Shown: positions 2,056-44,950 of the stretch, in pieces
How positions within the stretch are numbered: position 1 is the stretch's first letter
Layout: each line of letters begins with the position of its first letter
Source: Iphione sp. A-MEVVRFRX5
Lineage: Eukaryota
Assembly: GCA_976226885.1 (NCBI GenBank)
Contig: OZ320319.1
Span: 43,834,001-43,898,000, forward strand
Length of the DNA: 64,000 nucleotides
Reading direction: 5' to 3'
Translations under genes and position numbers: made by a program
Notes under the pieces: model-generated
Told to the model about the DNA's origin: nothing
The model's database searches: none
What the model saw: the letters and a program-made list of their open reading frames with translations, nothing else

Positions 2056-2091
2056 TGCCCTTGACTTAGACTGACTGTTGTCACCACCTAT

Positions 2092-15639: not shown

Positions 15640-17820
15640 TGGGCAACAACCCAGTGCCTATGAATTTCATTCAATTATTACTGCTGGAGATGGAATCAGA
15701 TGAAGATTTTTCTCCAATTGACAGCGACTGGGCAGATGGGCTCAACCTGGCTGCAAATATGCGTATAAATCATCAACAGTGAAAATTTGCATGAAAATGA
15801 GAGTACCGATGAGAACGGCACTGAAGAGTGCGAACATCTGGAAGCGAGCACTGACGATGAATGAGCTGACGCAGACTGGTTACCACCCATGGGTCAAATA
15901 GTTATTCCCCCTACTTCATCAATATTGAAAGGTAAGTGTATGTACCTCGACAGCAGGTATCTGTCAATTCAATGAGACAATGATCAAACAAAGTGAGACT
16001 CTCTTTCAAACAATATGTACCCAGCAAACTGACAAAATGCTGGGTTTTAGCAGAGAAAGCTTCACAGCATGTATGTCACCATGTGCCTTATTATTTTGTA
16101 ACTTTATTTAGACTAGAACCTTATACATCGTAGTATTTACATCCAGTGTGACCACTTACAATATACCCATATACTGTATATAAGATATGAGATTAAATGT
16201 GATGAGATATTTACAATGAGCGTTGGCTCACACACCCGTCATATTTGTCATCAAGTTCACTAATGACCTTAAAAATTCCTTCACAATCAAAGTCTAGTAC
16301 CTTATCTTTGACCGTTGTCTGCAGCGTTGCACACAGATCACGTCTGCATCGATGTTAATACCCTTTGCATAGCCTGGACCACATTCCCCTTGTCTAATTT
16401 ATCATGCATTCGTTATCTCATGGCCAGACGACATCTGCCATGTTATAGGAGAGAATTTTTGGTTAAAGGGCATCGATCCTTAGTTTGTATTGCACTTTTG
16501 TTAGCTGTTCACTCTTTGCTGGTAGTTTATCCATCGACAGACTGCCTATAAATTCAGGGGATGCTTTGTATCCTTCCCTCTGTGGGTTTTGTCTGACAAA
16601 ACGATATTTTCTTGTACCTCTCGTATTGCCCTGGGGATCGTGACTACCCTCACTATTGCATGCCCTCTCATACATATGCAGCAACAACTGCCTATTTCTT
16701 CTTTTTTCTAGTGACAAACACTTAGCTTTCTCCAGGCTTTCTTGCATATTTCTACCCCCATCTACGATCACTCTTATAGCTCTATTGTATAGGGCATTCA
16801 TCCTTCTAAAGTCTTCACTATTTGTTTTCGTTAAGGCTATTAAGCCATATTCAATTACCGGTAAAATTGTAGCCTTCAATAGCATAATTATATCCTTCCT
16901 ACCTAGAATACAGGTCTTTTTTCTTGCATATCTAATCTTCCCAGAGACTCGCCTAAAGACATCATTAACATGTTGTGAGGAGAATAATGTGTCATCAAGC
17001 AAGATGCCTAGGTATCTATAGCATGAAACTCTCTCGATATCATCATCTTTGCCCTCATTTAAATTTCTGTGTATGTATGATCGCACCTTCATCAACGCTG
17101 CCATTGTGCAGTTCCCCCTCCGAGATCCATACTGGCAACTACTCAGTAGATCGTAATTCTCCAAATATCTGCATAACTGATCAAATACCAATGACTACAT
17201 AATTTTTGCAAAGGTTTTTTGGTAGAGTAGATTTGGGTAAATTCTCTCTGTCTGAGCATGTTGTATTCAATTTATTGAAAAAGGCCAAAATGCTTGGAAA
17301 GGGCTACCAGATTTTTATGTATGGCTATATCAGCAGTGTCCCCTTGATCAAACGTCTATTGCAATATTCTCATGGAAAAAACAAGAGAATTTCCACAAAG
17401 GTTCAATGTATTTTATGAGAAATGATGATTTATTGTTGTCATTGTGGAGGGATAAGCATCTCATCTATGTACTGTTATTGAAGCAATAAAAATAAGTGCA
17501 ATGATTTTTATCATGAGACTGTTGAAAAGAAAATGACTCTCCTGTAGTTCAATATGGAAATGATTCACAAAATGTTTTCAACCTGTGTAACCATCGTTAG
17601 GCCAACTGTCCCACCTGATGAGAAAAGCCTATCTTATTTCTGTCAACCTGGGCAACAAGAGTTTTTGTCATGTTTATTATGAAAGATTTGTTGATAGTCT
17701 CCAGGCTCGAAAAAGCCAAATGAAATATGGATGCAAGGAGTGTGGTGTACATCTATGTACACTGAAATGCTTCACTGTATATGATACAGTAAGAGAATAA
17801 GTGTATCGGTGAGGAATGAA
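15640..17820 (+). mobile_element. Second decayed piggyBac transposase, split by a LINE insertion
   Basis: DEDFSPIDSD acidic N-terminus, a degenerate YVPRQQVS / SFKQYVPSK / CWVLAE segment (15940-16070), then after 17195 LSEHVVFNLL..LGKGYQIF and the C-terminal YGCKECGVHLCTLKCF. Confidence 0.8.
16080..17195 (-). mobile_element. LINE (CR1/L2 group) 3' fragment nested in piggyBac, with a 242-aa open RT remnant at 16463-17191
   Basis: LLSSCQYGSR..TMAAL, then directly IERVSCYRYLGILLD, ILPVIEYG, YNRAIRVI, LSLEKRR. The RT core including YADD is deleted in frame. Confidence 0.85.
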
Positions 17821-25396: not shown

Positions 25397-25680
25397 GGGA
25401 GGGCGTGGCTGGGGTGGGATGAGGGTGGGTGGGTCAGGAGGTGGTTGCTGATTGGTGTCTGCAGGAGGAGGCGTATGACGTCATGTGACGTCAGATGCTT
25501 CAGTGCTGCAGCCTCCATGTGGAAATCTGTTGTCTCACGTAAGAGACCCTCCTCCCCCTCCCTCCTTTCTCTTCCCTCCCTATCTTCTCCCTCTTCTCTT
25601 CCCTCCCTGCTCCCTCCCTCTCTTCCTCCTATCGCCAGTAATATTGGTATAAAGCGCCGACGGCACGGTCGCCACGACCA
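25397..25680 (+). promoter_or_regulatory. Probable promoter of the CCK/sulfakinin gene
   Basis: GC box GGGCGTGGC (25401), inverted CCAAT CTGATTGG (25448), two perfect CREs TGACGTCA (25476 and 25486), a CT-rich tract (about 25546-25630), and TATAAA (25648-25653). CpG-rich compared with its flanks. Confidence 0.7.
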
Positions 25681-25787
25681 CTACGACGACGACGAAGAGG
25701 ATCCAAGCGTAACGCCATCTGTGAGCAACCCGATCAACTGCAACTGCCCCCAAGACGAGGGAACGCCGCAACCGCCAACACACACTG
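25680..25787 (+). other. Probable non-coding first exon (5' UTR) of the CCK/sulfakinin gene
   Basis: Starts about 30 nt after TATA, has no ATG, and ends at the donor CTG|GTAGGT (25788). The next coding acceptor on this strand is at 43927, giving an intron of 18,140 bp. Confidence 0.6.
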
Positions 25788-27199
25788 GTAGGTGGTGCTC
25801 AGATCAAGTCAGACCAACCTACAAGTAGCCACATCTGACCCATAATTAGGCCTGTTATTATTAACAACTACCTACACCAACTACTGACCGCATTGTATTT
25901 ACCAACAGCTACACACAACTAGTACAATCCACAGCTTCTAATGTCTATACACACACATCTGGCAAATCTAACCGTGCTTACTCATAACTTCACTTACATA
26001 CCCACCTCAGCTAACAAATAATCACATCTTCATTTATCGTCCCACAGCACAAACGCACACCGACTTACTTTAAATTACATTAATACCCTTGCAGCAACCC
26101 CTATCCACCTAAAATAAACCTCCCTTCCCTCACGTGATGAGCGACTACCTTCGCCGTACCTAACGGTGAAACAACTACAGATATGCTACTGCGACTATTT
26201 ATACTCAGTCAAAATTAACCCAATCTACCAGAACTTCTTCTCACCGGCAGGAAGTACAGGGTTCCACAGAATGTAGTTGTTTCACGCGGATGCTGCAGTA
26301 GGCACCTTCAAAGGATTGAGGGTGATGAGAAAGGAAAAGGAAAGTGAGAGTTCTGGAAAATAGTGGAAAGTAAGAGATAGGAAGAGAAAATGGGGGAGAG
26401 AATGAAGAATGACAAAGAGTTCGACATTTTTTTTTTAAAAAAGGGACACCACGCACACAAATACACATAAGCCTAACTATTTGCCTGTTCATATTAGACC
26501 TGCTCACATGTGAACAACTTCTCGATCCTACTCTAATTTTTCCAGAGCTGCATATTCACCGATGGCTAGTAATCACTACGCAGTTACCATTGCTTCCTTA
26601 AATTATGTACAGCCATTAATGAAGACATACTGATATCTACTGAAAAATTACACACATTCCTGAACAAGTACCAAAGGACTCAACATATGCCAATATTAAC
26701 TTACCCTTACTCATAATTATCAAACATCACCCATACATACGATCATTATTTATAATTGCACGTCAGTACTTCTATTAACCAATGCCTACTGACAACTCTG
26801 ACGATTCAGGAAGTTATTTATGACAACAAGAAGACAATTTCACCAACAAATCACAACCAACTACACCTCTGCTCAGCTTGAAGTTCCCACAGCCAGTTAC
26901 ACATCATACCACACGAAACTCACTACTCAGTATCCGTCACACATACTCAGTGCCACTCATATTTACACATAACTACAACCATCTACGCATGTGTCACTGC
27001 GCACAACTGAGCTACTCAGTACTACCTGCATCAACATTAATACCTACCAATACCCACAACCAGTAAAATGTATTCGCCCAAAGTTTCTGAACACCTAAGT
27101 ATATACTAATTGTAATTTCGTAGTATACAATGTCAAAGAATACAGATCACAACCAAAGTCTGATTGAAAGTAGACTAGGTCTATTCGCTCTCCCCATTT

Positions 27200-28420
27200 G
27201 GAACGTAGTAGTATTTATGTCTTGGTGGAGAATTAAAATACATCGTTTTTTTTACCTCACACAAATCCTGCTTGTTAGTGTACAATGAATAGTTGTGTCT
27301 GTAGCCTATCCATGTATTGGTTACACTTTCTATAGGTTCCTTTGTTATTTTCATTTTATATGTTATTTAATCAATCATTTTCAAGTTAACCATAGGTTGT
27401 AATACGTTTAAAGCCATCAATGTATCGCCCAGCATACAGTTTCCATTCAGTCTCAAGTTTTGGTAGATATCCTCTAATTCCCGGATAAGCTCGGATTAGT
27501 CTATGCAATATTATTTTTTTCTTTTACCAGTAGTAGTTTGTGTTCTTTATGTAATTTCCTTATGGGGGTAAGTGTTGGAATATTTGTTAATCTTTTCAGT
27601 CTTATTTTGCATTACATCTAATTGTGTTCTATTTATATTTTTCTTACTTGTCTCCCTCAAATAATGTCAATATATTGGTAATGTAGTTGCCTTGTACACT
27701 TTAATTACCAGTTTGTTTGTTTCACATGTTCCCCCTAAAGAAGGGCTAATTGTAACCCATCAGAAATAAAAGGCAGCATAATGCCCCAAAGCAATGGAAT
27801 TTGCCTGGATTTGCTACCTACTGCTGGACCTTTGTCTTTGTTTTTTCAATAGTCAGACTCAGTTTGTTACTTTGTAAGCATTTGTCGACAGTATGAAGGT
27901 AGTGATTTATTTGATACTCCCTTTTGGGCCGTACCACTTAATAGTTTGGCTGTATCAGCAGCATTACATGGTAAGAAAGATCGTTTGTATAAATGTGAAA
28001 GAGAATAGGGCCTAGTACTGGTCCTTGTGGTACTTCATATTCATTTATTTACTGGCTTGAGACTTGATCATGTTTTCTTATTTGGTGTTGTCTGCAATGT
28101 AAATATCTTTTAACTAGAATTGATGCCGGTGATGAGAGACCATACATATGCAATTTTTAGATCAAGTTGCTATGGGGAATTGTCACAAAAGCTTTCTAAA
28201 AGTTCAGGGATGTTACGTTCAGAGTTTCCTTGTTAGCTAATCTTGGTTGAGAAACCTTGCCTGTATCCTCCTTATTTTCATAAAAAAAATATCCTTTTAT
28301 TCATAAGAGTGACCAGTTCTTTGTCTACTATTTTGCATAGCACTTTGTAATATACATCTAACATTGAAATTGGCCTGTGATTTATACTTGTTTAATCATT
28401 TCCGCGTGACAGTCAGATAG
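27200..28420 (-). mobile_element. Decayed LINE RT (I/Jockey/CR1 group)
   Basis: RPISMLDVYYKVLCKIV, a KAF.. segment, VPQGPVLGPILFHIYTNDL (about 27978-28035), and an AT-rich 3' tail. Confidence 0.8.
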
Positions 28421-28936
28421 ATATAATTATAATCATTGGATGTTGCAAATACATGTACTTGAAAGTCAGAAGTTGATAGACATCTAGCCATGGAACCGAT
28501 AAGATGCAGTTTTACATATGATCCTACGGAACACAAATCACAAATACCAATATCTATTGCTAGCGGGACAGTTTCCCAAAACTACTTCAAAGTACCACTT
28601 TGAACTGTCTGTTCTAACAATTAACCTGGATCATCAATAGTGTCACTTATCCTCTTCAGGTAGCATTAGGCACTACTAGGTATAAAACAGCCAAATATTA
28701 TTCCACCATTCATACCACTTCCCAGAAATAAATTCCAAACACTGGTCTACATATTAGGTTATCTTATAAATGTTATCGCACTTGTCAAGTGAGTAGGACA
28801 CATTAAATATTTAAAGCATGTTGGCCATCTTTAATGCTATGTGTGCCTATTTGAAGGAAGCGCTCAATATAACACATGCAATGAATGGGGAATGGGTTAA
28901 TTGTTTTGTATGCTACTGTCCTTTTCTCTATCGCAG

Positions 28937-29251
28937 ACCGTGGTGAGGAAGTGAGCCTGGGTCTTGGTCTGAGTCACCTACTATCGCCTGTCATTGTTAC
29001 AACACACACTGCAGATATTCTGTACAGATTTCTGTTATTTGGTCCTTGCCTTCTGTTTCCCGCAGGATGTGTTAGATATAACGTGAGTCCGAAAAATAAC
29101 AAGGTTGGGATTAGTAAGCGCAACCGAACTAATATCTAACCGAGCTCTTTCCATTACAGACTCATGGGGTGATGTATCTCACTTAAAGATGGTCTCATTG
29201 GGATGCTATAAAGGGCAAATCGACTGTCCTGAAGGTTTTTACCAGACGCAG
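28937..29251 (+). other. Cluster of three putative small exons (28937-28950, 29066-29082, 29160-29251)
   Basis: Each is preceded by a pyrimidine tract plus CAG (one with a CTAAC branch point) and followed by GTGAGC, GTGAGT or GTAGTA. An extra GTGAGT donor lies at 28789. Confidence 0.4.
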
Positions 29252-29689
29252 GTAGTAAAAACCTATACCGTTCACGTATATGGATAATACTGTTCATTTG
29301 TGCATGGTATGTGTGTTTAATTGTCTCTTCGGTATCCCATCATCACATACATTGTATATATTTGACATGTCAAGCATTTGCTGCTAGGTGCATTCCATAT
29401 TTACAGTGCTTACTTATATACATAATATAAACTATACATTAATAGTTACAAAATTAATTGTTAGAATTCGCATTTATACAAATCAACGATTTTTCGGTAT
29501 ATATTGCACAAAAACCTAGCAACTACATTCGAACGCCTATTTGAATTAGTCCCTCCGGTCCAAGCTCAAATGGGTCTGAAATTGATTTTTCGGGAGGTCA
29601 AGCCTGAAAATAACTCCCTTTCTCCCTCTCTCTCTCTCCCTACTAAGTAAATATATCTTTAATGTGCTGACCCTAATGAGTATAAATCC

Positions 29690-29830
29690 ATAAAGTGCGG
29701 AATTTAAGAAACAAAAGTCCAAAAAGTGCTAAATTTGATGAGTAAAAGTCTAAAAAGTGCTGAATTTGATCAGTAATCACCATGCAATTGCTGAATTTGA
29801 AGAGTATATGTCCAAAATTGCTGAATTTGA
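29690..29830. repeat. About 31-bp tandem repeat (AAAAGTGCTGAATTTGA core, about 5 units)
   Basis: Visible periodic motif. Confidence 0.8.
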
Positions 29831-31559
29831 CAAGTAGGCACCCTTAAAGTGCTTACTAAACATCTGGTGACACCTTCGACAATAAATATCCCTTAGCGTT
29901 TGAGCATGTCCGTAAATTCTTGAAGTCGGCATGACGTCACAGTGACTGATAAGCCTTGTAGCTTCAGTCACATATAGGTCAGGCTGCATGGGGTGGAGGT
30001 GAAAACAAGTGGAGTTCTCTCTTTGAACTATTATAATGTTTATGTCTATAATAATCAGTTGGCAATGATTTCAAAGGTAACAATGATATCATGATGAAGA
30101 TGCATGTAGAACTACCTTTAGATTAAGTACATATGCCAAAATTATTATTAGTTTGTTTTCACCAGGCCTTAGAGTTTATATTAGAATATGTAGGAACTCC
30201 CTGATTATCACCCACTCTTCACCTCTGCAGTATCTTTGCTAAATTAAAACTTTTAGAAGAGTATTTTAATCTATACACTAATGTGATCAGTTACATTAAG
30301 GGTTAACTTATACACTGTTCACAATGAAACCATATGATGTTTTTTAAATTTGTAAGAAATCAGCTCTGACAACTGATTGTTTACATGTTACTAGCTGAAA
30401 GTGCCCGGATTGCCGACTTCAAGAATGGTTGCATGGACATCTTAGTGGTTGCAGTGACACCTCTGGTTGCAAATAGACATTAAAATACAATAAAAACGAC
30501 CCTGGTATGTGTGATCGGATGGTGATTTTGGTCCGAAATTGATTTGGTCCGAAATTGATCTATTGTCATATTGATTACCTATAGGAAATCACTTGGTTCC
30601 TGGCTCAAACAGTAGGAATGGTTGATTTGATGGGAAATCAATGCGGTCAGAAACAGGTGTCTGACTGTATTACCTTACACAAGTTCCCGTTTGCATTAAG
30701 GTGTTTTTCACGTGTATCCATATTCTGCTATGCAAATGGATCGATTTGCATGTTTTAAGCCTCTCCTGTATGTTCCAATTAGCTTTTCACAATGCATGCA
30801 CACATAGGCTACACAAATGGATACGACAGTGTATCTCTCAACTCGTCAAAGACAGAATTTCTACAGATATGGATGCGTAGCTCATAGACCCCAACAGTAA
30901 AGGGCATGTGGTAGCCATATGAAAGTCAATAACATACGCAATCCACTAGGGGTAGCTACGCAAATAGATGTAACAGCGTAACTTTGGTACAGATATGTGA
31001 AAAGCCCTTTAGCACGGGTTTTAGGCTGCTTAGGTGCGCCGAGCCTTCGTTCATTAAAAAAATTCTTTAATGGTTGACGTCACCAGTTTTAGATGAGGTA
31101 TAAACCACGACCAGATTGATACAAAAACTCCCTCTCACCTTACAATTTTGCCTGTCCCCATCCCGCCAACACCCCCAACCTACGAATGTGGGGATGGGGG
31201 TAGGATAGTGTCCCTCCTGTCTGCCTCCTCAACAAGGTTAAGGTCATCCTCATCCTCCCTCATCGCCACGCCTACACTGAGATGTGCGGGGGTCAGAGTG
31301 AGGGGGTTGTGAGGATTAATGAGGCATGTTGGAATGCCTTATTAAACAGCCTGGAATGAACCCAGCATCCGCGGCCTTTCAACCCTGTCCCTCCGCCACC
31401 CATGCGCGTCACATCATTTCACCCTGTCGCCAAAACAGAATTCCGACAGAAAATTTCAAAGTTCTCCACAGTTGCCACGCCGATCTTTGTCCCTCTGACC
31501 AAAGGAATCCCACGTTGATCCGCATTCGGCCATGGACTAAGCAACTCCAATCGATAATT

Positions 31560-32560
31560 TAATGTCTTATTTATTAGATATATAAAACCTTTCTCAAATA
31601 GAAATCCTGTTAATTCTCTTATACATTTAATTCAATCCTTTCTAGTCCACAATCTGATTTTTATAACTATTAATTCAGGTTTTAGGGATAGTATTTATTT
31701 CTATGTTGGCTTGTTATACAGTTTTGAATTGGTTTATGCGACAGAGTAGATGTTTCTTATTTTATATATTTGTGACAAGGTCTATATATGTTATTTTCCA
31801 TTTCAAAATCAGGTAGTAGTTCTCATTTCTCTATAACCTCTTATTAGTATGTGCAATAGTGTGCTTTGGATTGGTGACATTAGATTGCAATGTTTGCCTA
31901 GTTCTTTAGTGAGTATTAATTTGTCTTTGTTTGACAGTTTCATAAATAATGTTTTTAGACTTACTTGGATTTTCCCAATACTTGCTTTATTAAGATACAC
32001 TCGAGAATATATCCATTTAGTTAGTTGTGGGAACAATTATCGCTTTGAATAGACAGTTACCTGTGTTGCCTATTCCTGTTATTAGGGTCCGTCCAAATAT
32101 TCCTTCAAGCCCCGCCTCGCCTCTTGTTCCCCCGTAACCTTATAATGTAGTTGTAAGTCATTGAAGGCTTGTGAGGAATGCTTGGGGTTGTATGGGCCCA
32201 TAACTGGTGGAAACGGTTGGCGCAGACTGAATATAGGTTGGTGGAGGCCAGTAAAATTTAGTCAAGAATTGATGTAGTCAGTGGAGACATTAGGTGTCTA
32301 ATGGAAGGAGATGGAGGTTTGTAAGGGATTGTGAGAATGCAGAAGGATAGGTCAGGTTGATCAGGCCTGATGAAGGTTGGCGGAGGCGGTACTGGTGCAA
32401 GTTAGTTAGTCTGGCGGCACCTTATAATGGAGATGAACAGAGTTGGTGCGAAAAGCCAGCGGACTGCAGGGAAGGATGTTGGAAGCTGGTGAAGATGTGT
32501 GTAAGTCGAAAAAGAGTAGTTAAGTCTGTCAAGGTAGGTGGATGTTGATGAATACTGCTG
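31560..32560 (-). mobile_element. Decayed LINE remnant (endonuclease-like part joined to a 3' RT tail)
   Basis: C/A-rich minus strand with an endonuclease-like pattern at 32150-32560, and a 3' region resembling the 27200-27700 tail. Confidence 0.45.
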
Positions 32561-35500
32561 GCTACTGGGTTGAGTTTGGCAGAAGTTGGTGAGGGTTAGT
32601 GTGACAATTTACGCCTTGCACCGGTTGACGGAGATTAACGGAAGCCGACAGGGTCCCGTAGACCTAAACAACATATCAAGCTACCACACCCTGCTCCTGT
32701 TCCTTCCCCTGCTCTTTCTCCTCCCACCGTGACTCCCCCATTAAAAGAGGCTCATCGGTGAACGTCTGAGGCATGGACGACATGGCGCCTCGTAACCCGC
32801 CACCACGTGATCTACACCGCCATCTGGGGGTTGACTTTACGACCTGCCCCCTGACATCATGGCCAACATGTATAATATATGAAGGGTCATTGCCTTGTCA
32901 CCGACAAGGACCTACACAGATACCAGTTGTGGTGACAGAAATAGGGGCAGCGTCCGGTAAGGCCAAGGCGTAGAAAATGAGGTGAGATTGTGGTTAACTT
33001 ACAGACATGGACAACGTGTGGGGATGGGAAGGTATAAGGTGTGTCAAAATTGTGGTAACCTATGAAGAGATGTGATGTTAAAGAGAAAGGAGGTAAGACG
33101 CAAGACTGTAAGTTGCTAATTCCAAATTCTATGTTCGTTTCTGTATTAGTAAAGTTATCATTCTTTACAGCCAGAATATATTCAGCAACTTCCCAACCAA
33201 TGTAAGGTCTTTGCTTACTTATAAACTGTCCATGCCTACAGTGTCTTGTACACGTAATGTATGTCCACATCTTTATGCGTATACACGTATCTTCATATGT
33301 GAGCCCCTACATGTGGGCACGTCCTCCCTTTGCATGTGCGATCGTCCTCTTAATAAATGCTATATCCATATATATATTTGTTTCCCTGTCTTCATCGACG
33401 TCTTAGTAGCACTCTTAAACCTACATCACTTTGGACCTATCAGTTAAATAGAAAGGTATTGGATGATAACATGAAAAAATCACTGCGTACAACATTGTGT
33501 GCACATCAGTGGGGGTATGAGTCTGTTACTTATGTTTGTGTATATTTGTCTTGTATTTCTGTTGGGTATTGTCCATCCTGTCTTTATGAACCAAGGCGTG
33601 AATATACGTGGCTCACTGTTCTGCCTCTCTGGCCCAATTCATACTGATGTGTGCCAGTCTGTATGCATGTATACTTACGTGAGGACCTCTTTGTAATCCC
33701 CATGTCATCATGCCTACGTCAATTACATGCACACCTTTGTCTGCGTGTAATTATATGCATGGCCGTCTGTGCTTGTGTCTCTTTAAGCCATCCGTCTGTG
33801 GCTATCCACACTTTTGTGTGTATTTCACTGTGGTTATGCCTCTGTCTATCGCACTACGTTTGTAGGTGTCTGGGTTCCTTTGTGCCGTCTGTGTGTGGCC
33901 ACCCTTGGACCTCTTTCTTTACGACTAGAATGAAACCACTTGACTCCCTCTACTTCCAGAGGGCACTAACTGCCCTGCCCGTCGCAAGGGCGCCGCCTCA
34001 TTAACTGCCCACTCTCAAGGGGGCAGTAGTGGTCACATAGCGTCCGTGATGAAGGGATGGTTGCGCCTGGACGGGATCATAGGTGGCTCTGTCTGTGTCT
34101 ATGTGGAAGCGGTTGTCTATTTGTGTTAGGAGATGAAAGCTAACCCACACCCCATATTTAACACATCCCTTACCCAACAATAAATCATCACAGCACACAC
34201 ACACGCCACCACCACCACCATCACCATCACCACCAACATACACACCACATTCACCATATCCCACACTGGATATACCCGATACTTGACATCCCCCAGTTTA
34301 TTTCTTTTGAAACTTTACTTCCCGAATATCCAACACACTCAAACTCAAACTCCCATACCGAGAACAATAGCTCACTCACCAGACGCCACTCCTTCCCGAT
34401 ATAGGGCTTTCACCTTCCTATAACCCACATTTAGCATAGCACTCACCAAAGTGAAGCACACCGCCCACACTCCATGATCGCCACCTTCCTTCCTTGACTC
34501 TCCGCATCCAATATTTTTCATGCAACATCATCCCCCACACAATCCTCCTTCCTCTCAGTCCATTAATACTTTCCCCGCACCTTATTGCATCTCTATTCGT
34601 CGGAATCGTAGAGTGGTTTTGGCGAGAAGGACCCTGGACCGTTTTCCTCTACCCATCTCGAGGGCCTACTCTCAGGAAACAACACCTCCTCCCCCACCCC
34701 CGAATATATATGGGGGCTGAGAGAGGGGCCACTCATCACAGCGAAGGCAATATCACCTGGGGGAGGGAGTTAATTTCATATTTCTGGAATCTACACCACA
34801 GTGTCCACGATATTTGTATTACTTTTGATCTATACCTAACTGTCTCTGTCCCGCATACCTGCCAGCCGCAATTATGTAGATGTATATGTACTCCCTCTAC
34901 CGGTCCTACGCCAATCTTCGCGTACACACATGCACCTGTCTCTGTCTCACACCCCTGCATTTCCCTTTCTTCAGTTTCTCCCAGTATAGACCTCCGCCAT
35001 CCCTTCCTTCTTGAGTGTCTCTACTCAGACCGCTCCTTGACCGTCCGAAAGCCACGCACTCGGTCCTAGTCGGCCCCTCTTGGACTCTCTGCAACACTCA
35101 CTCCCTCATTATGACGTCAGTAAAGCTCGTGTAAACCTTGACGGTCACGAGAATACACGAGAGACTTGCAAACACAGGCGTCGTCCTCCGCTCTTGGTGG
35201 ATGGGAGGGGGAGATGACCACGTAGTAGAGTGGAGAAGGAGCGGGAGGAGGAAGGGGAGTTGGAATTGGCTGTGTTATGGAACAAAGACTGAGGTATGAG
35301 GATCGGCCACTGAAGGGGGTAGAACGTTGAGAACTAGGGCCTGAAGATGGAGAACTACGGTCTGAAACTGGAGGAATGACAACTTAGATTTTAGCACTGG
35401 GGTCTGCACTGATGCCTAACAAACTGTATGCGTCTGAGCATTGAAATCTGAGGTGAAACCAAGTCCGTGTGTCTGTTCATATACTGGTATGTTGTACATT

Positions 35501-36208
35501 AAAACGTCAACAAAAAGAAGACGGGTAGTCCATCCAGTACCCTACATGTTGTACATTGATGTTAATAAAACATTACTTGTCCATCCCTGTCTATTTTCTT
35601 TTTAGGAAAAAACCTATTTCTGCTCATTTCGTATGTGGTGAAGACATTTGGTTAGCAGGCATATGTGAAGATAACGGTTTACCACGCATTACCCTCTCAG
35701 AAAGAGATACACGTGCACATATTTCAATTGCACGCTTTGAATTGTCGACGTCGACACATGCATGCACCATGTATTCAAGGGTGCGTTTTCAGCAAAATAC
35801 ATGTAAATATGCAAAATACATGCAAATTATGGCCAAAAACGGAAATTGATGCAATTTAGCTGAAAATGGTGAAATTCAAAAATTCTGACATTCATGCAAA
35901 TTTAGCCGTTCTAACACTCGCGCCGTGACGTTTCCTATAGAGCGCAGTGGACACAAGCAGGGCATGAGTCTCAGGACCCAAAAATGTTCCAACATATCAG
36001 AATTGTAAAAATAGAGTTTTGATGCATATTTTTCATTAATTTTAAGCATAAAGTGGTTACATTTTCTTAGATTGTTGTTTTGATTACAGATGAGATCCTT
36101 AACTGATACCTGCTGTATTTAGTTGGTATTTTCATATTTATCAGGATATTCATCTTTCATGCCTAAAACAATAAAATCATCCAGATTATTATTCTCGTCG
36201 TTAGAACT

Positions 36209-36313
36209 GCGGTTAAGTGCATTTTCTGAATGTTGTTCCCAGGACTAAACCTATCGGCCCTCAACATCGGGGTTTAGTCCTGGGAACAACATTCAGAAAA
36301 CGCACTTAACCGC
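36209..36313. repeat. Near-perfect 43-bp inverted repeat (foldback element) with a 19-nt loop
   Basis: GCGGTTAAGTGCATTTTCTGAATGTTGTTCCCAGGACTAAACC versus the reverse complement of 36271-36313: 42/43 identical. Confidence 0.95.
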
Positions 36314-38829
36314 TATGACAAATGCCACAACCAGTAAACAGATGTATGGAAATGTGCAGAATTGTGCAGAATTATGTGGAATTATTTAGTTCTTTTTACA
36401 GAAAACATGGATAACAAGACTTATTCACTCTCACTGTTCATATACTTCTCACGAAAACAGGGCTGTGAGGCCATGAAAATAACACGCCCATGTTGCTGTG
36501 TTTCCACAGCCATGCTTATATGCCCCTAAGGTACACTGTGTTGGTGGGAAGTATAGTCCTAAAATATTAGCCGGAAACACACCAGCATGTCCATTAAAAC
36601 ATGTGTATAATGAAATTCAGCCTAATCCCCCATCAAAGTGCATAAAACAACAACTGAATGCTAGACATGCATAGGAAGTTCATTGTGAAAGCAAATAATA
36701 GATGTGATGAGAGATATTGCAGTTATATCGGACTCCAACATATTGTCATTGATGAGAGGAAAGGAGTAAAGGGTTTGTACGTGATATGGATAAAAGTAGA
36801 TTCTGAGTCCTTCGTGAATTTTGTCCTAACTATATCGGAATACAGGTAAAATCTCTGTATTGTGTGACTTTTGCATCACTATCTGTGCACTGTCAACCCA
36901 CTTTTTCTATGCATATACCATACATTTATTTCACAGCCATATGATAAGGCCCCTTTCTTATACTTCTTTGCCTGTGCAGTATACACGGCCCTAAAGCTCT
37001 CAACATGCACGGTGACATCGCAGTCACATGCCAGTCTATATTTCTGTCTCATCTAACCTATTATTATTTCTCTAGTCATGGTTAGGTCCATCACTGACTG
37101 TGGGTCTGAGTATGTAATGTTACAGCCTTCCCCCTTCCAGAAGAGACACGATTTGCAGCAGATAGTGACATGTGCATAAAGAAACCCCTTGTTTCAATCT
37201 GTTGCATGACACACCGTAATATATACATGTATACATGTATATATGTACCGGAGGTGATCCACTTTTATATACTTACTTGGTCGTGATGCTACATCTGCTA
37301 GCATTTGTCACTTCGCAAAATGGGTTGCTGTTTAATGAGAAAAATGAGATGTTTAATAAGACAGAATTCCCATCTCTGCCTCACCGTCTTATTGGAGTAC
37401 CAATCTGTAACGTCTACGTGCACCTATATGCCCCTCTCTCAGATAGGTACTGCCAGCGACATTGTGGTTCTCGACCCTGTCTTAAATTGTACTTTGCATC
37501 CCCTAATCCAGGTAGCCCTGCCTTGCTTGCACTCATCCGGTGTATGTATGTCTGTGTGTGTGTGTTGTGGGGAGGGGTATGTGTGTTTGTGCGTGTGTTG
37601 CATGGATATGAGCGAGATTAAAGGGGGGCAGGCTATCGCTGACTGGGGGTAGTTGAGGAGTTGGTTCCTGTGATGCCAGTGCCCGATGAATATTCGCCGT
37701 TTGTTGCCGGAAGAGAACAATTAACCGCGTGTAAATAAAAGCGAAGGCTGCGTCAATTCCAACAGCCGGCGGCCGGGAGATTGGACTGTGTGTTTGTGTG
37801 TGTATGTGTGTTTGTGTGTGTGTCGGGAAAGGCGAGGAGCGTTATCGAAGGAGTGCGGAAGGCCTGGGGCATGGGGAGGGGAGGAGGTTTGCCACGGGGG
37901 AAGGGGTTGGGGGAAGGTCTTTGAGACGGAGCGGGAAAGCATCTGCTTGAGCTGTCCTCCGTCCCATCGACCGCCTACCTGGCGGCACTCCGCCCAGAGA
38001 CCCGCCTTTTATCAGTGTCTTGCCGGCGTCTTAGCGGCGTCTGTCCGGACCATGACATTGATCCGACCCGCTTTGATATGAAAGGTAAATGGCAGAGACT
38101 CCCAGCCGCCGCCCCAAGACGTACCCCTCCCTCGCCCTCCCTCCCCCAGCCACTGTCTTTTCCCTGTACTACACCCTCCTATCTTTCCTACAGGTCCCTT
38201 AGTTCTGTCCATTACCGGGTATTTCTTTCTTTGCCTCTCTCTCTCTCCCTTCTATCTGTCTGTCCGTCTGTCTCTCACTCTGTCTCTCTTTCCCCTGTAG
38301 AATATATGTCCAGATTTTCCTTCGCATATCCAGTGTCTTGCTGCAGCTCCCCTCATGAATGTCCTCTTCCGTGTTTGCTGTCTTCTCCCGTCTCATTGTT
38401 GGTGTTTTGTGTGTCATTCGGTCTTCAATCCTTTTGTTTCGCTTTTACCCTTCAGTGTCGTGTCTGTGCCTTCTGTTCACCCTTCAGCTGTTGCCCTCCG
38501 TCTCTCGATTAGTGATTCCTGTCCTCCCCATTCTGTCCTCTATTGAAGAATACTGCCGGCTCTCACTTTCTCTTCGGGATAAGTTTACTAATACGTTAGG
38601 GATAGGTTCAGAAATAAGCCAAAAATACGGTTGTGGAGATGGTTAGGTAAAGGACGAAGCCTACGATTAGCAAGACAGCTCGGGGTGAGCATAAGAACGG
38701 GATTAGGATTCAAGTTTTGGTCAGGGATTGGAGGGAGTTAAGATTGGCAAAAGCATACATGACAGCTGAAGACAGAGTTACCCAAGATTTCTTACTTTAT
38801 TTGTATTACAAGCGCTTTTATTAAATGTC

Positions 38830-39420
38830 ATGAACTGGCTTGAGTATGGATGGTCTAGTTTACCATCAATGCAAGTGAGGTGTATAGAAATTACCATACA
38901 AGTGAGGTGTATTAAAAAGTCGAATAAAACTAAGGAGGATACTAGGTCTGCAGCATTGAATATTGCTGGCCAGGACGATGATTATGCCACAAATCGAATA
39001 TGGAATTATTGCAGTACTAAAGACTAATGGAGAAGCTTTCATGCGTTCATGACTTTATAAGAAAGTAGCGAGAATTACAGTATAGCCCGAGGGCTAGGAT
39101 CACAGGAAAGCCTATCATTATGCAAGTGCCAAGATCTGAAGAAAAGACGTGATTATGCGATTCTCGTTTACATGTGTGATATTAAGAGGAAAGGGAAGAG
39201 ATTGATTAACCCAGAAGGGACAACGAGAAGGAAACAGAAATATCACTTTCCTAGGCCAAGAATAAACCGTGAAAACTTTAGGTTTTCACCAGAGTACATC
39301 GATGGCAGGTTATGGGATCGTCTTCTTCCAGGCGTGGAGAAGATGACAAAACAACGATTCAAAGCATTAAAACAAATCATACATTCTCTTAGAATGTGAA
39401 ATAGATACAATTTTCAATAT
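38830..39420 (+). mobile_element. LINE 3' fragment related to the 16463-17191 element
   Basis: QESLSLCKCQDLKKRR and NPEGTTRRKQKYHF..FRFSPEYIDGRLWDRL align with QESLEKAKCLSLEKRR and DPQGNTRGTRKYRF..YKASPEFIGSLSMDKL. Confidence 0.7.
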
Positions 39421-40504
39421 GATTTAAACAGCAAATGCTTCCATTCAGCCATCGTCTGAGTACAGGACATAGTTTATCTAAATTGTCCGAATGAAAAATG
39501 GGAATGTCGGATGCTCCAGCAGGCGTCGTCATGATGGAGTGGGTGCTATTTAGAATAAGACCAAATATCAAAAGTGATCCACAAAAAGTGGTTTCATGTG
39601 TGTATACTATCATAACCTAGCATAACTGTCCATAATCGTTTGTCATTGTATCATTGTAATGGTTTTCATGTGAAAGCATTGTCTTGTATAAACCTGAAGA
39701 GAAGTACTATAATGTATAAGAATTCAGGCTAAATAACGATATTAAACAAATTGGTATGTTACGGATTGGATGGTATGAAATTCCTAAGGAAGAAATCGTC
39801 AATGATTCTTTACAGTCCCTTTAAAGTCCCCTCCCTATCGCCGTCTTCAGACCAGCAATCTACCCATCTCTTCCATTATCGCCATCTCTCGTCCTCCCCT
39901 CCCAATGGCTTTTCCCTCTCCCCGCTATTTCACTGATAATTGCCCTCCTCAGTCGTCAGGTTGACCTCTGGTGAATGGTCAGGAGCCTACACCGGAAGCG
40001 GAAATTGCCGTTCAGTGGCATTAAGTGGCACACAACCCGACATTTCCGGCGCTTGCTTCACATTTCCGGAGTCCGTTTCTCATTTGTCGGCCTGCTTCAC
40101 ATTTTAGTAAGGCTTCACATTTTTGGTGAGGCATAACGACTGATAGGAGAGCTAAGTCGTGTCCGCGAATTGACGTGTGCACTAGTAGGGAAAGTGGGGA
40201 GAGACCCCGTCAAATACATGCACTCAGGTCAAGGTGTCCACCTACAGGTTGCAGTCCTTAGTCACCCAGCCTGCTGTACACACGATATACCTCAACAGAA
40301 GACTAAATAAAGCCGATGACATTTTCATTCTTCCCTTCTTCTGGCTTTGTCCTGTTCCCAGACTTCAGTGCAACATTCAACTCTTCCCCTTCCACACTGT
40401 AACCTGAATGTCCCTGCCCAATACAAAGGAACCTCGTTAACCAGAGGGCCTGTGGATATCGTTTTTTGTACGGATGACAGAAAAGCTGGAATGCGAATAT
40501 GCGA

Positions 40505-41130
40505 CTCATGCATCTCCTGGTGGAGAAAAATGGCAAACTTTATGGAGATCAAGGCAAATTCCATGGCGAAAGTGCTGAAAAATGGTTATTTCATGGAGAC
40601 TGAGGCAAATTTCAGGAAGAAAGTGCTAAAAAACGGCTATTTCATGGAGGCAAACTCCATGGAGAAAGTGCCGGAAAATGGCAAATTTCAAGGAGAAAGT
40701 GATCAAAAATCACAAATTGCAGGGAGAAAGTGTGGATAAACCCTTGTTAGTCTCTCTTTGTTCTCTTACTATAGAAGGGTCTGGCCAGCATGTAGTTCTT
40801 ATTTCGCACATCTGTATTCTACTTTGAATCTATGTTAGTCGCTCTGCGCTGTGTTTTCTCCTCCTTTAAGAGGGTCTGGCCTGCTTGTCGCTCTTATGCA
40901 ATTGTTTCGGACGTCTCTGATGCTTCCTTTGTTCTCCTACTCCAGTTAAGTGTGTCTATTTCTATAGTAAATGATCTAAGAATGTTGTTAAATACACTCC
41001 GGGTATGGTAAGCAAAAATCCGTTTAAATAGTACATTTTATACAGAGAAACACTTGGTTATTTAAAATCGATATGGTTAGTGAAAAATTCCAGATGTTGC
41101 AGCTCCGTTAGGTGAGGTTCATCTGTACCT
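40505..41130. repeat. Dispersed repeat family X, copy 2
   Basis: Collinear with 6015-6570. Confidence 0.75.
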
Positions 41131-43929
41131 GCATCCCTCTACTCTGCTTCACCTTTCACCTGCCACTTTTTTACATCCTATCCTCCTGTAGACTACCTTC
41201 TTCCATGGGCGTCAACCCATTGTACTAATGTTGCCTCTACATTCCTGCTTTACCACCTTTACCCTCCGCACTTTCCCTATTTGATATACATGTACATGCA
41301 CACACCACTGTATATCAACTGCATGTATTGTTTTGCTTTATACAATACTGATCATCTGATGTTGTCCACCTAACTGTGTAAGGAGTCTTATGGAAAGTAA
41401 TGGACATCAAAGACAGTTATGTATGTACCTGTTCAGTTTAATAAATGTCTTTTTTTTAAAGCGTGTCTGTGTATACTTGTTCGAAGTACAAAGCTGCATC
41501 TAGCAGCAGCAACCAACCAAGCACACCCCTCCTCCCTTTTATCCTAAAGCATATCGCCTCCAGCGGCCTGCTCCTGCTTTTCCACAACAGAAAAGTTGCC
41601 TCTGGCAGGTTCCCCCAACCCATGCACCCTGTCCTACCCGGCCCCCTCTCTGTGTGGGCTTTTTTGTTCCTTCACCACAGACAAAGCGGCTTCTAGCGGT
41701 TCCTGAACACACCACACCCACAGCGTCACCACGTGCAAGCGGTAGGAACTAAAACCCCTCTCTCGCACCGGAAGGCGCCAAGTCACGTCCGTGTGGGACG
41801 CCCGGCCGACGCCGGACAGACGCACGACAGAAACCCGCTGTGAGGACGTGCAGCGTTCTGTGAGCGAAGAGTGCCAGTTGGTGTAAGGAGGAAGAAGGGA
41901 GGGGAAGGGGACAGGCGGTTGATAATGGGAAATGAACAGAAAACACGTTATTTCATAATACAAGGAGGACTTGAGAGTAAAGGACCGTGAAGACTATATA
42001 ATATATTAAATGCGGTTCTAACAGGGAGAAGATATTTAATATTTTAGCTCGGGGAGACGTACACTAGTTGGGAGTAGTTAAGCACGTGTACAATAAAAAG
42101 ATGTATAATTATTGTAACAATAGTAAGAAACGCACTCATATGAAGTCAAAGTAATTATGTACACAAAATTACATCCGCAAATTACGAAACAAGGGTCGAC
42201 ACCGAAACCATGGTCACTCTCACTCTAGTGACGAAATTAAAATTTCGAGCACGGGGATGTTTATCCTTATAGTGAGTTATGTGCGTGCATTCAGAACAAA
42301 TAAACTCTGACAAAGAAATCGTCAGGTAAGAATAACCACGGGCGTTGAAGTTCTAGGCATAAATGACGAACGGCATTGGAATTAAAAAAAAACTTTAGAT
42401 AACGACTGCACTTAACTTTGGAGGCCAATTATGTTTGGCATAGAATCAAAACAGCTAGCTGTCGGTGCTTCGCTTACATGGGGGCGAAGGGGCGGGGGCG
42501 GCTATAGTTGAACGTTCAATGTCCTGGACTTCCGGCCGCCGCCAGAAACATGCGTTAACTGATCGATCACATGTCGATCTCCTTATCTGCTTCGGCAGAC
42601 TGTCTCAGGCCCCGCACTGAGGACCCTGGGGAGTTATATATATATGGGGGGGGGAATACGGCTTGGGGGAGGTGAATGGTATGTGGATGTAGAGGGCAAA
42701 AGTGAGGAGGAGGGGTCCAGATACTCAGCAGATGCAGGTAGTAGACGTAGCTTGAGTGATATCGAAATGGGGGCAGGAGATGTGGAGGACAGGTAGGTTC
42801 GGGGTGGAGTGGAAAGCTGGAGGCACGTCAATGTAGATGGTAGATTGTGGTATGGTGTTGGGGGTACAGGCCTGTATACGTGCTTGTTGTAATGAGTGCC
42901 TTAGGGGATGGAGACAAAGGGAGATGATATTGGCAAATACAGCATATGGATAGGAGATAGAAGTGGTGATGGGTATTGGTTACGATATGCATATTTAAAG
43001 CCAGTAAAAGGCCGTCAGAGATTCATTGGGACCCATGAATTCTTTTCCCAACATCGACGGCACATTGAACAGACTGGTGTCAAGATCTATTGCAGACGCG
43101 GAAACAAATATGCCTCTCCCTACCATCTTTAACCGCCGCTATCACCTATCGTGCCTGAGGTGAGTTCGTGTCACCCTGTGGTGTAGCAGCACGCTGGTCG
43201 GTTCGTCATCAGTATGATGGAGTATAGTTTCTGCTCAACACTAGCTCCTTCCTCCCGTCCTGTGTGGAGTTAGTTCGGGTGGGTGGGGTGGGAGCATATA
43301 CTGGCATCTGCAGTTTTATGCACGCACCTAGCGCCTCTTTTATCTCGCTACATGTTTTAGGTCTCCTGTATTTCCAATCGCCTGTCACACACGGCCTCTT
43401 AATTTAAGCAACGCTCCTTTATTAGGAAGACTGCCATTGTTACGTGCAAGGCATGATGGGAGAGATGCAGAAATCTACTTAGTGAATTTCTATAGCCTGC
43501 CACACCCGTCGTGCACATATCCGCCTCTTTAATCAGAATATACACAAATAGATATATAATTACATTGAGCATTTCACCGCCTTGAAGGGCCAGAGCTTTG
43601 TTCTTAGACAGTAGGAGGTCGGTACGTCCTTGGTGGTAGCCGAATGGAAGGCCACCGCCCCTGATATCGATGCCATTGCTTAACGTACAAATCAGTGTAA
43701 ACAGAAGGGCGTGTCTGTGTGGTGTTTTGGGTCAAAATGTAGTAAGTTGTGTATATTATGTTTCACATGTCACATTTGCACAAATTTTAACTTTTCTCAC
43801 TTCATCACACCGTTCCTTTCCTTATTCCAGAGACACTAGAACTTCTACGGACCCCCCTCCTTTGTGTTAGATAGATGAGTGCAGCGTCCTAGTTTTCTAA
43901 CCTTGCCCTCCTCTCTGTGTGTTCCAGAC

Positions 43930-44328
43930 ATGAGGACCCAGCTCCTTTACACGGCCCTCTCCGTTCTCGCTGTGGCCGCCTACTGGGCCGCCGCTGCCGC
44001 CGCTGCCTCCCCGCCGGTCGTCGACGACGACTCGCCGCCGTCCAAGGACGACGCGCTTTTGGTGCGGCGCCTGCTGCGGCCAGTGTCGGAGCTAGCTGCA
44101 CAGGCCAACCACCTTGAGGCGCTTCTTGCTGATGTTTTGGCTGCCGCAAGGGGCGCAGGTGGCGCGCGAGGCAAGCGGCAGGGCGCAGGCTGGGACATGG
44201 ACTATGGCTGGGGCGGCGGTCGCTTCGGCAAGAGGGCTGAGGTAAAGAAGAGATACGACATGTACGGTATGGGCGGCAGGTTTGGGCGCGACGTTGACCA
44301 CGTTGACCCTGAGGAGGGCGGACACTGA
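43930..44328 (+). CDS. SK: Cholecystokinin/sulfakinin-type neuropeptide precursor (132 aa, single coding exon)
   Basis: Acceptor with CTAAC branch point and pyrimidine tract (..TTCCAG|acATG). Hydrophobic signal peptide, then GKR-QGAGWDMDYGWGGGRF-GKR, KKR-YDMYGMGGRF-GR, and the tail DVDHVD. This matches lophotrochozoan CCK/SK peptides of the type pQGAWxxDYGxGGGRFamide. Confidence 0.95.
   Translation: MRTQLLYTALSVLAVAAYWAAAAAAASPPVVDDDSPPSKDDALLVRRLLRPVSELAAQANHLEALLADVLAAARGAGGARGKRQGAGWDMDYGWGGGRFGKRAEVKKRYDMYGMGGRFGRDVDHVDPEEGGH
44179..44229 (+). other. Mature peptide 1: pQGAGWDMDY(SO3?)GWGGGRF-amide (plus Gly amide donor)
   Basis: Flanked by KR and GKR. N-terminal Gln allows pyroglutamate formation, and D-Y in an acidic context is a predicted sulfation site. 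Confidence 0.9.
44254..44286 (+). other. Mature peptide 2: YDMYGMGGRF-amide (plus Gly amide donor)
   Basis: Preceded by KKR and followed by G-R. Confidence 0.85.
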
Positions 44329-44337
44329 GCCCCGACG

Positions 44338-44386
44338 GCACTAGGGGGCGCACCGGACAGTCATGAGGTCGCAACCCCCCTGGTGG
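44338..44386. promoter_or_regulatory. Two CTCF-like motifs in opposite orientation just after the stop codon
   Basis: GCACTAGGGGGCGC (+, 44338-44351) and CCACCAGGGGGG (-, 44386-44375), compared with the CCACYAGRGGGCGC consensus. Confidence 0.4.
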
Positions 44387-44449
44387 GTGACGCGGGAACT
44401 AAGCTAGAGAGATGGTGCTGGACGTTTTTCTTCACCACCACCAGAAGGC

Positions 44450-44950
44450 ATGTTGGTGTCCCGTGTCACGTGGTCGAAGGGCAGGAGCCCAGTGTATACC
44501 GAGTGTAAATAAAGGTGGTCCTGTACCAGGGTCGTTCTGACAAGATTACAGACTATTTTGTCTTTTAGTAGAGTAACACAACTGAAGATACTCAAGCAAG
44601 AGGGTCTCTTTTGGGATTACTGAAGACACGTGGGAACAGTCGAATATTCGGTTGAGAAGAGGGAGCTTAACGGGACTGATGGTGATCGAAAGGAAGATGT
44701 GGAGATGAACTAGAAGTAGCCTTTAAGAGAGTCTAAATAAGTGGTGGCCGTAAAGTGTGATTGAGATTAGGTAGATGAGAGTGAGTGAGGTCAGCGCATT
44801 CGTGAGACAGCTGAGGTTCACACGTAGGTAGAGAATTGTTAGGTTAGCAGGTGATGTTGGTGTAGCCGGTGTGGAAATCATGTACTTAGGAGGTGTGGAA
44901 GTGAGGAACTTATCAGCTGGACTTTTGTGTGTTTAAGAGGGAGTGGACCA
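44450..44950 (-). mobile_element. Decayed LINE RT N-terminal fragment, antisense to and just downstream of the CCK/SK CDS
   Basis: Degenerate pre-RT pattern (SLKGYF..SSF..SVPL..KRPLLLEYLQL) on a C/A-rich minus strand. Confidence 0.4.
44508..44513 (+). terminator. Candidate polyadenylation signal of the CCK/SK mRNA
   Basis: First AATAAA after the stop codon (180 nt downstream), followed by GT-containing sequence. Confidence 0.4.

What the first reader, a model, noticed from the sequence alone, without database searches (positions are those of the whole stretch)
25397..25793. Hidden promoter and non-coding first exon of the CCK/sulfakinin gene 18 kb upstream of its CDS
Seen: within 400 bp there are seven G-tracts (25397-25433, a potential G-quadruplex), a GC box, an inverted CCAAT, two perfect CREs exactly 10 bp apart (one helical turn), an ~80-nt pyrimidine tract, TATAAA, an ATG-free ~108-nt exon and a GTAGGT donor. 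The CDS begins 2 nt after a strong acceptor, so it needs an upstream exon. Established: vertebrate CCK, somatostatin and proenkephalin promoters are cAMP/CREB-responsive, and neuropeptide genes often have a non-coding exon 1. Inference: this is the SK promoter, implying CREB-type control of CCK/SK in this lineage.
Basis: partly seen in the sequence, partly recalled or inferred. Interest (0 to 1): 0.7.

Follow-up and report, generated by a model that had tools for sequence, protein, structure and literature searches.

The report
Likely distal promoter of worm sulfakinin gene
A single-copy cluster of classic promoter signals lies 18 kb upstream of an annelid cholecystokinin/sulfakinin gene and is the best candidate for its start site and non-coding first exon, but no RNA data could be obtained, so the link is still an inference.

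Summary
The sulfakinin (SK) coding sequence (43930-44328) is one exon. It starts 2 nt after the best-formed 3' splice site on its strand in the window.

Other annelid SK loci also carry an acceptor-like signal a few nt before the ATG, so an upstream non-coding exon is expected.

Points favouring the 25.4-25.8 kb element as that exon and its promoter:
- TATAAA sits 32 nt before an initiator-like A.
- Two full CREs lie 162-172 bp upstream of the TATA (the "CRE/TATA" class).
- The donor ranks in the top 1.2% of GT sites on the strand.
- There is no usable donor on the opposite strand.
- I found no other recognisable host gene in about 164 kb.

Points that weaken it:
- The ATG-free exon is explained by its T-poor composition.
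- CRE pairs are common in this genome, and some sit in transposons.
- The strongest donor in the window is at 43160, only 768 nt from the acceptor.

Verdict: a plausible promoter prediction of a known kind, probability about 0.5. The claim of conserved CREB control is speculative.

The parts
25397..25433 (+). Seven G3-4 tracts (G-quadruplex-type motif), including the GT/Sp-KLF-type box GGGCGTGG at 25401-25408
25451..25455 (-). CCAAT box; it reads ACCAATCAGC on the minus strand, an NF-Y-type consensus
25476..25493 (.). Two full palindromic CREs (TGACGTCA) 10 bp centre to centre; the E-box CAGATG (25492-25497) overlaps the second
   Evidence: 23 such 2-nt-spaced pairs genome-wide against 1 in the control
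25547..25632 (+). CT-rich polypyrimidine tract (3 purines in 86 nt). It is a simple-repeat type found at many loci and is the only multi-copy part of the element
25643..25653 (+). Second inverted CCAAT (ATTGG) directly followed by TATAAA (25648-25653)
25680..25787 (+). Predicted non-coding exon 1 (108 nt, A/C-rich, 9% T, no ATG). The start is inferred from TATA + 32 nt and an initiator-like CCACT
   Evidence: start and use not measured
25788..25793 (+). Candidate 5' splice site ctg|GTAGGT, ranked 46th or better of 3937 GT sites on the strand
25788..43927 (+). Predicted 18.1-kb 5'UTR intron. It holds no protein-like or neuropeptide-like ORF, a young 510-bp high-copy repeat at 29916-30426, and several CpG-rich patches
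43897..43927 (+). Branch-site consensus CTAAC (43897-43901), pyrimidine tract and CAG acceptor. It is unique among 1887 YAG sites of the strand in combining these
   Evidence: comparable acceptors before the ATG in other annelid SK loci
43928..44513 (+). SK coding exon: CDS 43930-44328 (132 aa, two CCK/SK-type peptides ending GRFG), with AATAAA at 44508-44513
43160..43165 (+). Rival 5' splice site gag|GTGAGT, the highest-scoring donor in the window, 768 nt upstream of the acceptor. ATGs lie at 43035 and 43110 in front of it

Best explanation
The element at 25397-25793 is an RNA polymerase II promoter of the CRE/TATA type.

Upstream activator sites (G-rich Sp/KLF-type box, NF-Y CCAAT box, two full CREs with an overlapping E-box) sit about 190-280 bp before a TATA box and initiator. 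Transcription is predicted to start near 25680 on the + strand. It would produce a 108-nt non-coding exon that is spliced from 25787 across an 18.1-kb intron to 43928, 2 nt before the start codon of the single coding exon of the annelid cholecystokinin/sulfakinin precursor.

Shown:
- the motifs, their spacing and their single-copy status;
- the quality of the acceptor and its recurrence in other annelids;
- the lack of any other recognisable gene nearby.

Inferred:
- that transcription starts here;
- that this donor joins that acceptor;
- that a CREB-family factor acts on the CREs.
For: - Motifs and spacing are verified.
- The element is unique in the 1.18-Gb genome except for the CT tract, and unique DNA runs from about 24.86 to at least 27.3 kb, so it is not a transposon promoter.
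- CpG observed/expected is 0.77 in 25-26 kb, against 0.48 for the 25 kb upstream.
- TATAAA is 32 nt before an initiator-like A. Two full CREs lie 162-172 bp upstream of the TATA, which meets the published sequence definition of activity-inducible CRE/TATA promoters (PMC5740062).
- The donor is in the top 1.2% of GT sites.
- No donor scoring at least 4 bits lies on the minus strand within 1.6 kb of the element, which argues for + strand output.
- The acceptor at 43927/43928 is the best formed on the strand.
- A pyrimidine tract plus CAG lies 2-3 nt before the ATG in L036 (twice) and L039. A conserved block ...TTGTCATAG|AGACGGTCGTC-ATG occurs in about ten oligochaete contigs, with conservation lost more than 60 nt upstream. 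The control rate is 4% of ATGs.
- No protein-like or peptide-precursor ORF lies between the element and the CDS.
- Only transposon-type ORFs are seen in the rest of the window and in 60 kb to the left and 40 kb to the right.
- No Rfam family or tRNA is found.
- A pKID (CREB-type) domain is encoded in the genome.
- Mammalian CCK also has a small non-coding first exon and a CREB-bound CRE next to an E-box and a GC-rich region (PMC5389988).
Against: - There is no transcript evidence of any kind.
- The ATG-free exon is expected from its base composition.
- The TATA/ATG-free/donor composite occurs once on the control strand too.
- CRE pairs are frequent in this genome: 1537 with 0-24 nt spacers against 49 in the control. 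At least four of the 23 pairs with a 2-nt spacer lie in LINE or piggyBac-like elements.
- The CREs are about 200 bp from the predicted start and are separated from the TATA by a simple repeat.
- The 2.6 kb directly upstream of the CDS is also mostly unique and CpG-rich, and holds the strongest donor of the window at 43160.
- No orthologous promoter could be compared.
Confidence: 0.5

Rival explanations
1. The SK first exon is proximal, within about 1-2.5 kb of the coding exon (for example ending at the 43160 donor, or at 42793 or 42326). On this reading the 25.4-kb element is a distal enhancer, an alternative promoter, or unrelated to SK.
For: - The donor at 43160 (gag|GTGAGT) is the best of 3937 GT sites on the strand and lies only 768 nt from the acceptor. 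Only 2 sites reach that score in 64 kb, so about 3% by chance.
- The 2.6 kb upstream of the CDS is mostly single copy, with CpG observed/expected of 0.7-0.9.
- A TATA-like TATTTAAA lies at 42992.
Against: - Only 47 nt before the 43160 donor are free of ATG. An exon starting further upstream carries ATGs at 43035 and 43110. Read by eye, their frame runs across the junction past the SK start codon; no joined sequence was given to any tool.
- There is no CRE, CCAAT or canonical TATAAA cluster there.
- A TATA-like site followed by an ATG-free path to a donor is found nowhere else on the + strand.
Confidence: 0.27
2. The element is a real promoter, but for a separate transcript: a long non-coding RNA, or a gene whose short exons escaped ORF inspection. 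SK merely lies downstream.
For: - The promoter signals are generic (NF-Y, Sp/KLF and ATF/CREB sites are common in many promoters).
- Short exons cannot be excluded by ORF listing.
- 18 kb is a long first intron.
Against: - No protein-like ORF, Pfam domain, Rfam family or peptide-precursor ORF lies between 25.8 and 43.9 kb.
- No host gene is recognisable within about 164 kb.
- There is no minus-strand donor nearby.
- The next well-formed acceptor in front of a coding exon on this strand is that of SK.
Confidence: 0.13
3. The cluster is a non-functional chance assembly of short motifs in a locally GC-rich, CpG-rich patch.
For: - Each motif is short.
- G4 motifs occur 7 times per window and CRE pairs 1537 times per genome, so neither is rare.
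- The motifs were chosen after reading the sequence.
Against: - Five CREs against 0.74 expected, with two of them adjacent.
- TATA and initiator are at the optimal spacing.
- The DNA is single copy and CpG-preserved inside a transposon-rich, CpG-depleted region.
Confidence: 0.1

Closest known systems
Mammalian cholecystokinin (CCK) gene promoter and gene structure (Rehfeld 2017, PMC5389988, citing Nielsen 1996 and Hansen 2001)
   Same: - The first exon is small and non-coding, and the coding sequence begins just after an intron.
- A CREB-type site sits next to an E-box and a G/C-rich region.
- The peptide family is homologous.
   Different: - In mammals the E-box, the single hybrid CRE/TRE and the GC-rich region lie within the first 100 bp of the promoter. 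Here two perfect palindromic CREs lie about 195-205 bp from the predicted start, behind an 86-nt CT repeat.
- The whole mammalian transcription unit is about 7 kb with two introns. Here the predicted first intron alone is 18 kb and the coding sequence is one exon.
- Nothing has been tested functionally here.
CRE/TATA class of CREB/CRTC-inducible promoters (c-fos, Nr4a1, Nr4a2; PMC5740062)
   Same: [quoted passage not shown]
   Different: The class was defined in mouse and human with measured start sites and CREB/CRTC1 binding. Here only the sequence criteria are met, in an annelid.
Lophotrochozoan CCK/SK precursor genes (oyster, Aplysia, Capitella; review PMC8921109)
   Same: Precursor with two peptides of the DYGxGGGRF-amide type. 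The coding sequence is uninterrupted in this window, as the review draws for invertebrates.
   Different: [quoted passage not shown]

Membership tests
RNA polymerase II TATA/initiator core promoter | TATA box about 25-35 nt upstream of an initiator | tested here: met
   TATAAA at 25648 and an initiator-like CCACT with its A at 25680, 32 nt downstream. This is at sequence level only.
RNA polymerase II TATA/initiator core promoter | Transcription actually initiates there | not testable with these tools
CRE/TATA CREB-responsive promoters (PMC5740062) | Full palindromic CRE TGACGTCA | tested here: met
   Two copies, at 25476 and 25486.
CRE/TATA CREB-responsive promoters (PMC5740062) | [quoted passage not shown] | tested here: met
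   The TATA at 25648 is 162-172 bp downstream.
CRE/TATA CREB-responsive promoters (PMC5740062) | A CREB-family factor exists in the organism | tested here: met
   A pKID domain match of 31.8 bits (cut-off 25) at C11:54998555.
CRE/TATA CREB-responsive promoters (PMC5740062) | Induction by cAMP or activity, with CREB/CRTC occupancy | not testable with these tools
   This needs a reporter assay or ChIP.
CCK-type gene architecture (non-coding exon 1) | Encodes a CCK/SK-type precursor | tested here: met
   151 homologues, including named cholecystokinin/sulfakinin precursors. 24 columns are invariant across 17 annelid sequences.
CCK-type gene architecture (non-coding exon 1) | Intron in the 5'UTR ending just before the start codon | tested here: met
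   The acceptor with CTAAC branch site is unique on the strand. Comparable acceptors occur in L036 and L039, with a conserved block in oligochaetes. This rests on sequence and comparison, not on RNA.
CCK-type gene architecture (non-coding exon 1) | Exon 1 at 25680-25787 is joined to exon 2 at 43928 | not testable with these tools
   No RNA data were available.
Mammalian-type CCK proximal promoter | E-box, CRE/TRE and GC-rich region within the first 100 bp upstream of the start | tested here: not met
   The corresponding motifs lie about 185-285 bp upstream of the predicted start.

The most novel reading that the evidence does not exclude
The gene architecture of a non-coding first exon, together with CREB-site control next to an E-box and a G/C-rich region, is an ancestral bilaterian feature of CCK/SK genes. 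On this reading it is shared by annelids and vertebrates, and worm sulfakinin expression is tuned by cAMP or neuronal activity through this distal promoter.
Probability: 0.1. Interest if true: 0.6.

Novelty: new member of a known kind. Interest (0 to 1): 0.3.

Why it matters
If confirmed, this would give the transcription start and cis-regulatory region of an annelid satiety-peptide gene. It would show that annotating this gene needs an exon 18 kb away, and it would offer a testable case of CREB-type control of CCK/SK outside vertebrates.

The comparative result is independent of the promoter. A 5'UTR intron ending just before the start codon appears to be general in annelid SK genes, which adds to a literature that records introns in these genes only for mammals and C. 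elegans. As it stands, the element is an ordinary-looking promoter prediction without expression data.

Tried and rejected
- **Transposon or LTR promoter.** Rejected: the element is single copy.
- **Divergent promoter for a minus-strand gene.** No donor, ORF or domain lies on that side.
- **Hidden gene in the 18-kb interval.** No protein-like or peptide-precursor ORF, Rfam family or tRNA was found.
- **SK paralogue with a comparable upstream exon.** None exists in the genome.
- **Conservation of the CRE pair in relatives.**
  - The 53 annelid SK loci from JGI metagenome contigs are too short and too distant to include an orthologous promoter.
  - Most TGACGTCA sites in them are coding, at Ser-Asp-Val or Met-Thr-Ser codons in the signal-peptide region.
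  - One oligochaete contig (L051, the same as L052) has a CRE pair about 310 bp before the ATG. It is not shared by the other species.
- **'Exactly one helical turn' as a special spacing.** Not supported.
- **The other 2-nt-spaced CRE pairs as promoter markers.** The picture is mixed. CpG observed/expected is raised at most of them, but several lie in LINE or piggyBac-like elements.
- **Literature search for the peptides.** No hit.
- **Joined model.** Frames across junctions were only read by eye.

Full report
**What is there**

The window is G000:C15:43834001-43898000 of a 1.18-Gb chromosome-scale genome. The open frame 43930-44328 encodes a 132-residue precursor with a signal peptide and two dibasic-flanked peptides ending in GRFG.

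A word-indexed protein search found 151 relatives. The closest named ones are from the annelids Capitella and Paralvinella, followed by molluscan proteins named cholecystokinin/sulfakinin. In an alignment of 17 annelid sequences the peptide region is invariant. The organism is therefore an annelid and the gene is its CCK/SK-type gene. It has no paralogue in the genome.

**Check of the observation**

- seven G tracts at 25397-25433;
- GGGCGTGG at 25401, a GT box rather than a canonical GC box;
- ATTGG at 25451, which reads ACCAATCAGC on the other strand;
- TGACGTCA at 25476 and 25486;
- a CT tract at 25547-25632;
- TATAAA at 25648;
- no ATG from 25520 onward;
- donor GT at 25788.

I add three features: an E-box (CAGATG) overlapping the second CRE, a second ATTGG abutting the TATA box, and an initiator-like CCACT whose A at 25680 lies 32 nt after the TATA.

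The 601 bp around the element are single copy. Only the CT tract matches elsewhere. Unique DNA extends from about 24.86 kb to at least 27.3 kb.

**How much is beyond chance**

- TGACGTCA occurs five times in the window against 0.74 expected. The copy at 29932 belongs to a 510-bp repeat with thousands of copies.
- The donor ranks within the best 46 of 3937 GT sites on the strand.
- The ATG-free exon is weak evidence. The exon has 9% T, and 45% of composition-matched shuffles lack ATG.
- The composite of TATAAA, an ATG-free path and a donor of this strength is found once on each strand.
Pairs with any spacer from 0 to 24 nt number 1537 against 49, and many of these come from a repeat family.
- At least four of the 2-nt-spaced pairs lie in LINE or piggyBac-like elements.

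The CRE pair is therefore a real local enrichment. It is neither a rare signature nor a specially phased one.

**Does the SK gene need an upstream exon?**

The site at 43927/43928 has a CTAAC branch consensus at 43897-43901, 82% pyrimidines and CAG. It is the only one of 1887 YAG sites on the strand with this combination.

A scan of JGI metagenome contigs with the annelid alignment returned 53 SK loci, many from gutless-oligochaete samples.
- In L036 (two copies) and L039, a pyrimidine tract plus CAG ends 2-3 nt before the ATG.
- In about ten oligochaete species, a block TTGTCATAG|AGACGGTCGTC-ATG is conserved, while sequence more than 60 nt upstream is not alignable.
- By a strict pyrimidine criterion, 4% of control ATGs look like this. 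The T/G-rich oligochaete tracts fail that strict criterion, so for them the argument rests on the conservation pattern.
- Two database gene calls (P0002, P0033) extend upstream of the ATG into residues that read like a translated pyrimidine tract plus CAG.

I conclude that a 5'UTR intron ending just before the start codon is a general feature of annelid SK genes, as in mammalian CCK, whose first exon is small and non-coding (PMC5389988).

**Is the exon the one at 25680-25787?**

In favour:
- It is the only place on the + strand where a TATA-type box is followed by an ATG-free path to a good donor.
- It carries the richest set of upstream activator sites.
- It fits the published sequence definition of CRE/TATA promoters.
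- Its CpG content is preserved in a CpG-depleted, transposon-rich neighbourhood.
- The minus strand offers no donor within 1.6 kb.
- The 18 kb in between hold no protein-like or peptide-precursor ORF.
- There is no known RNA family in the window.
- The rest of the window, plus 60 kb to the left and 40 kb to the right, show only transposon-type ORFs.
- The genome encodes a pKID domain, so a CREB-type factor is present.

Against:
- No transcript data could be obtained. An earlier agent working on this genome reported the same.
- The strongest donor of the whole window lies at 43160, 768 nt from the acceptor, in unique CpG-rich DNA. Exons ending there would carry upstream ATGs unless they start within its last 47 nt. 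That makes it a less attractive SK leader but does not exclude it.
- Other CpG-rich patches at 34.8-35.3, 37.6-38.3 and 41.5-42.6 kb could be enhancers or alternative starts.

Frames across junctions were judged by eye only.

**Comparison with known systems**

The element works like a CRE/TATA promoter and resembles the mammalian CCK promoter in its ingredients: a CREB site, an adjacent E-box, a G/C-rich region and a non-coding first exon. The layout differs. The sites are 185-285 bp from the predicted start rather than within 100 bp. There are two perfect CREs rather than one hybrid CRE/TRE, and the intron is 18 kb.

Orthology of the regulatory logic is not shown. In the only relative with a CRE pair near SK (L051, the same as L052), the pair is not shared by sister species.

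**Verdict**

It is a new member of a known kind and of modest interest until RNA data exist.

Noticed in passing
window 29916-30426: A 510-bp interspersed repeat with thousands of candidate copies, many 93-99% identical, so it has been active recently. Its 5' end carries a full CRE (TGACGTCA at 29932).
   Followed up: partly
window 43160: gag|GTGAGT is the highest-scoring 5' splice site in the window. It lies 768 nt upstream of the SK acceptor and is preceded by a 41-codon open frame starting at the ATG at 43035. Its use is unknown.
   Followed up: partly
L039:569-1147: An annelid SK gene on a metagenome contig has an intron inside the coding sequence, between ...QQQWE and AMDYGWGGGRF (acceptor ...tcttgcag|GCG ATG GAC). 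A 2022 review (PMC8921109) states that introns in CCK/SK genes are known only in mammals and C. elegans.
   Followed up: partly
L042-L070 (about ten gutless-oligochaete contigs), 60 nt before the SK ATG: A conserved block CGCTGCAG ... TTTTGTTGTCATAG AGACGGTCGTC ATGG is shared across species, while everything further upstream is unalignable. It is probably an acceptor plus a short conserved leader.
   Followed up: partly
L051:3009-3029 (same as L052:2896-2916): A pair of full CREs with a 4-nt spacer lies about 310 bp upstream of the SK start codon in one oligochaete. It is not seen in the other species.
   Followed up: partly
L063, L069, L071, L075-L087 (oligochaete SK paralogues): TGACGTCA recurs inside the coding sequence because the signal-peptide end encodes Ser-Asp-Val-Thr or Met-Thr-Ser. 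CRE counts near these genes are therefore misleading.
   Followed up: yes
G000 genome-wide; L020 (C10:44592794) and L021 (C10:90510678): Pairs of full CREs are common: 1537 with 0-24 nt spacers against 49 in the control. They include a repeat family with the spacer AAATTAGA recurring about 120 bp apart, and a LINE family with a CRE pair between its two ORFs.
   Followed up: partly
window 340-2883 (-), 16463-17191 (-), 57154-57666 (-): Transposon remnants: a gag-like ORF with a zinc knuckle, a LINE reverse-transcriptase tail, and a DUF3504 (Crypton-type) ORF. The SK gene sits in a transposon-rich gene desert of at least 164 kb.
   Followed up: partly
window 43701-44500: The SK coding exon has CpG observed/expected of about 0.8-1.0, against 0.54 for the whole window, as expected for DNA that is unmethylated in the germ line.
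   Followed up: no
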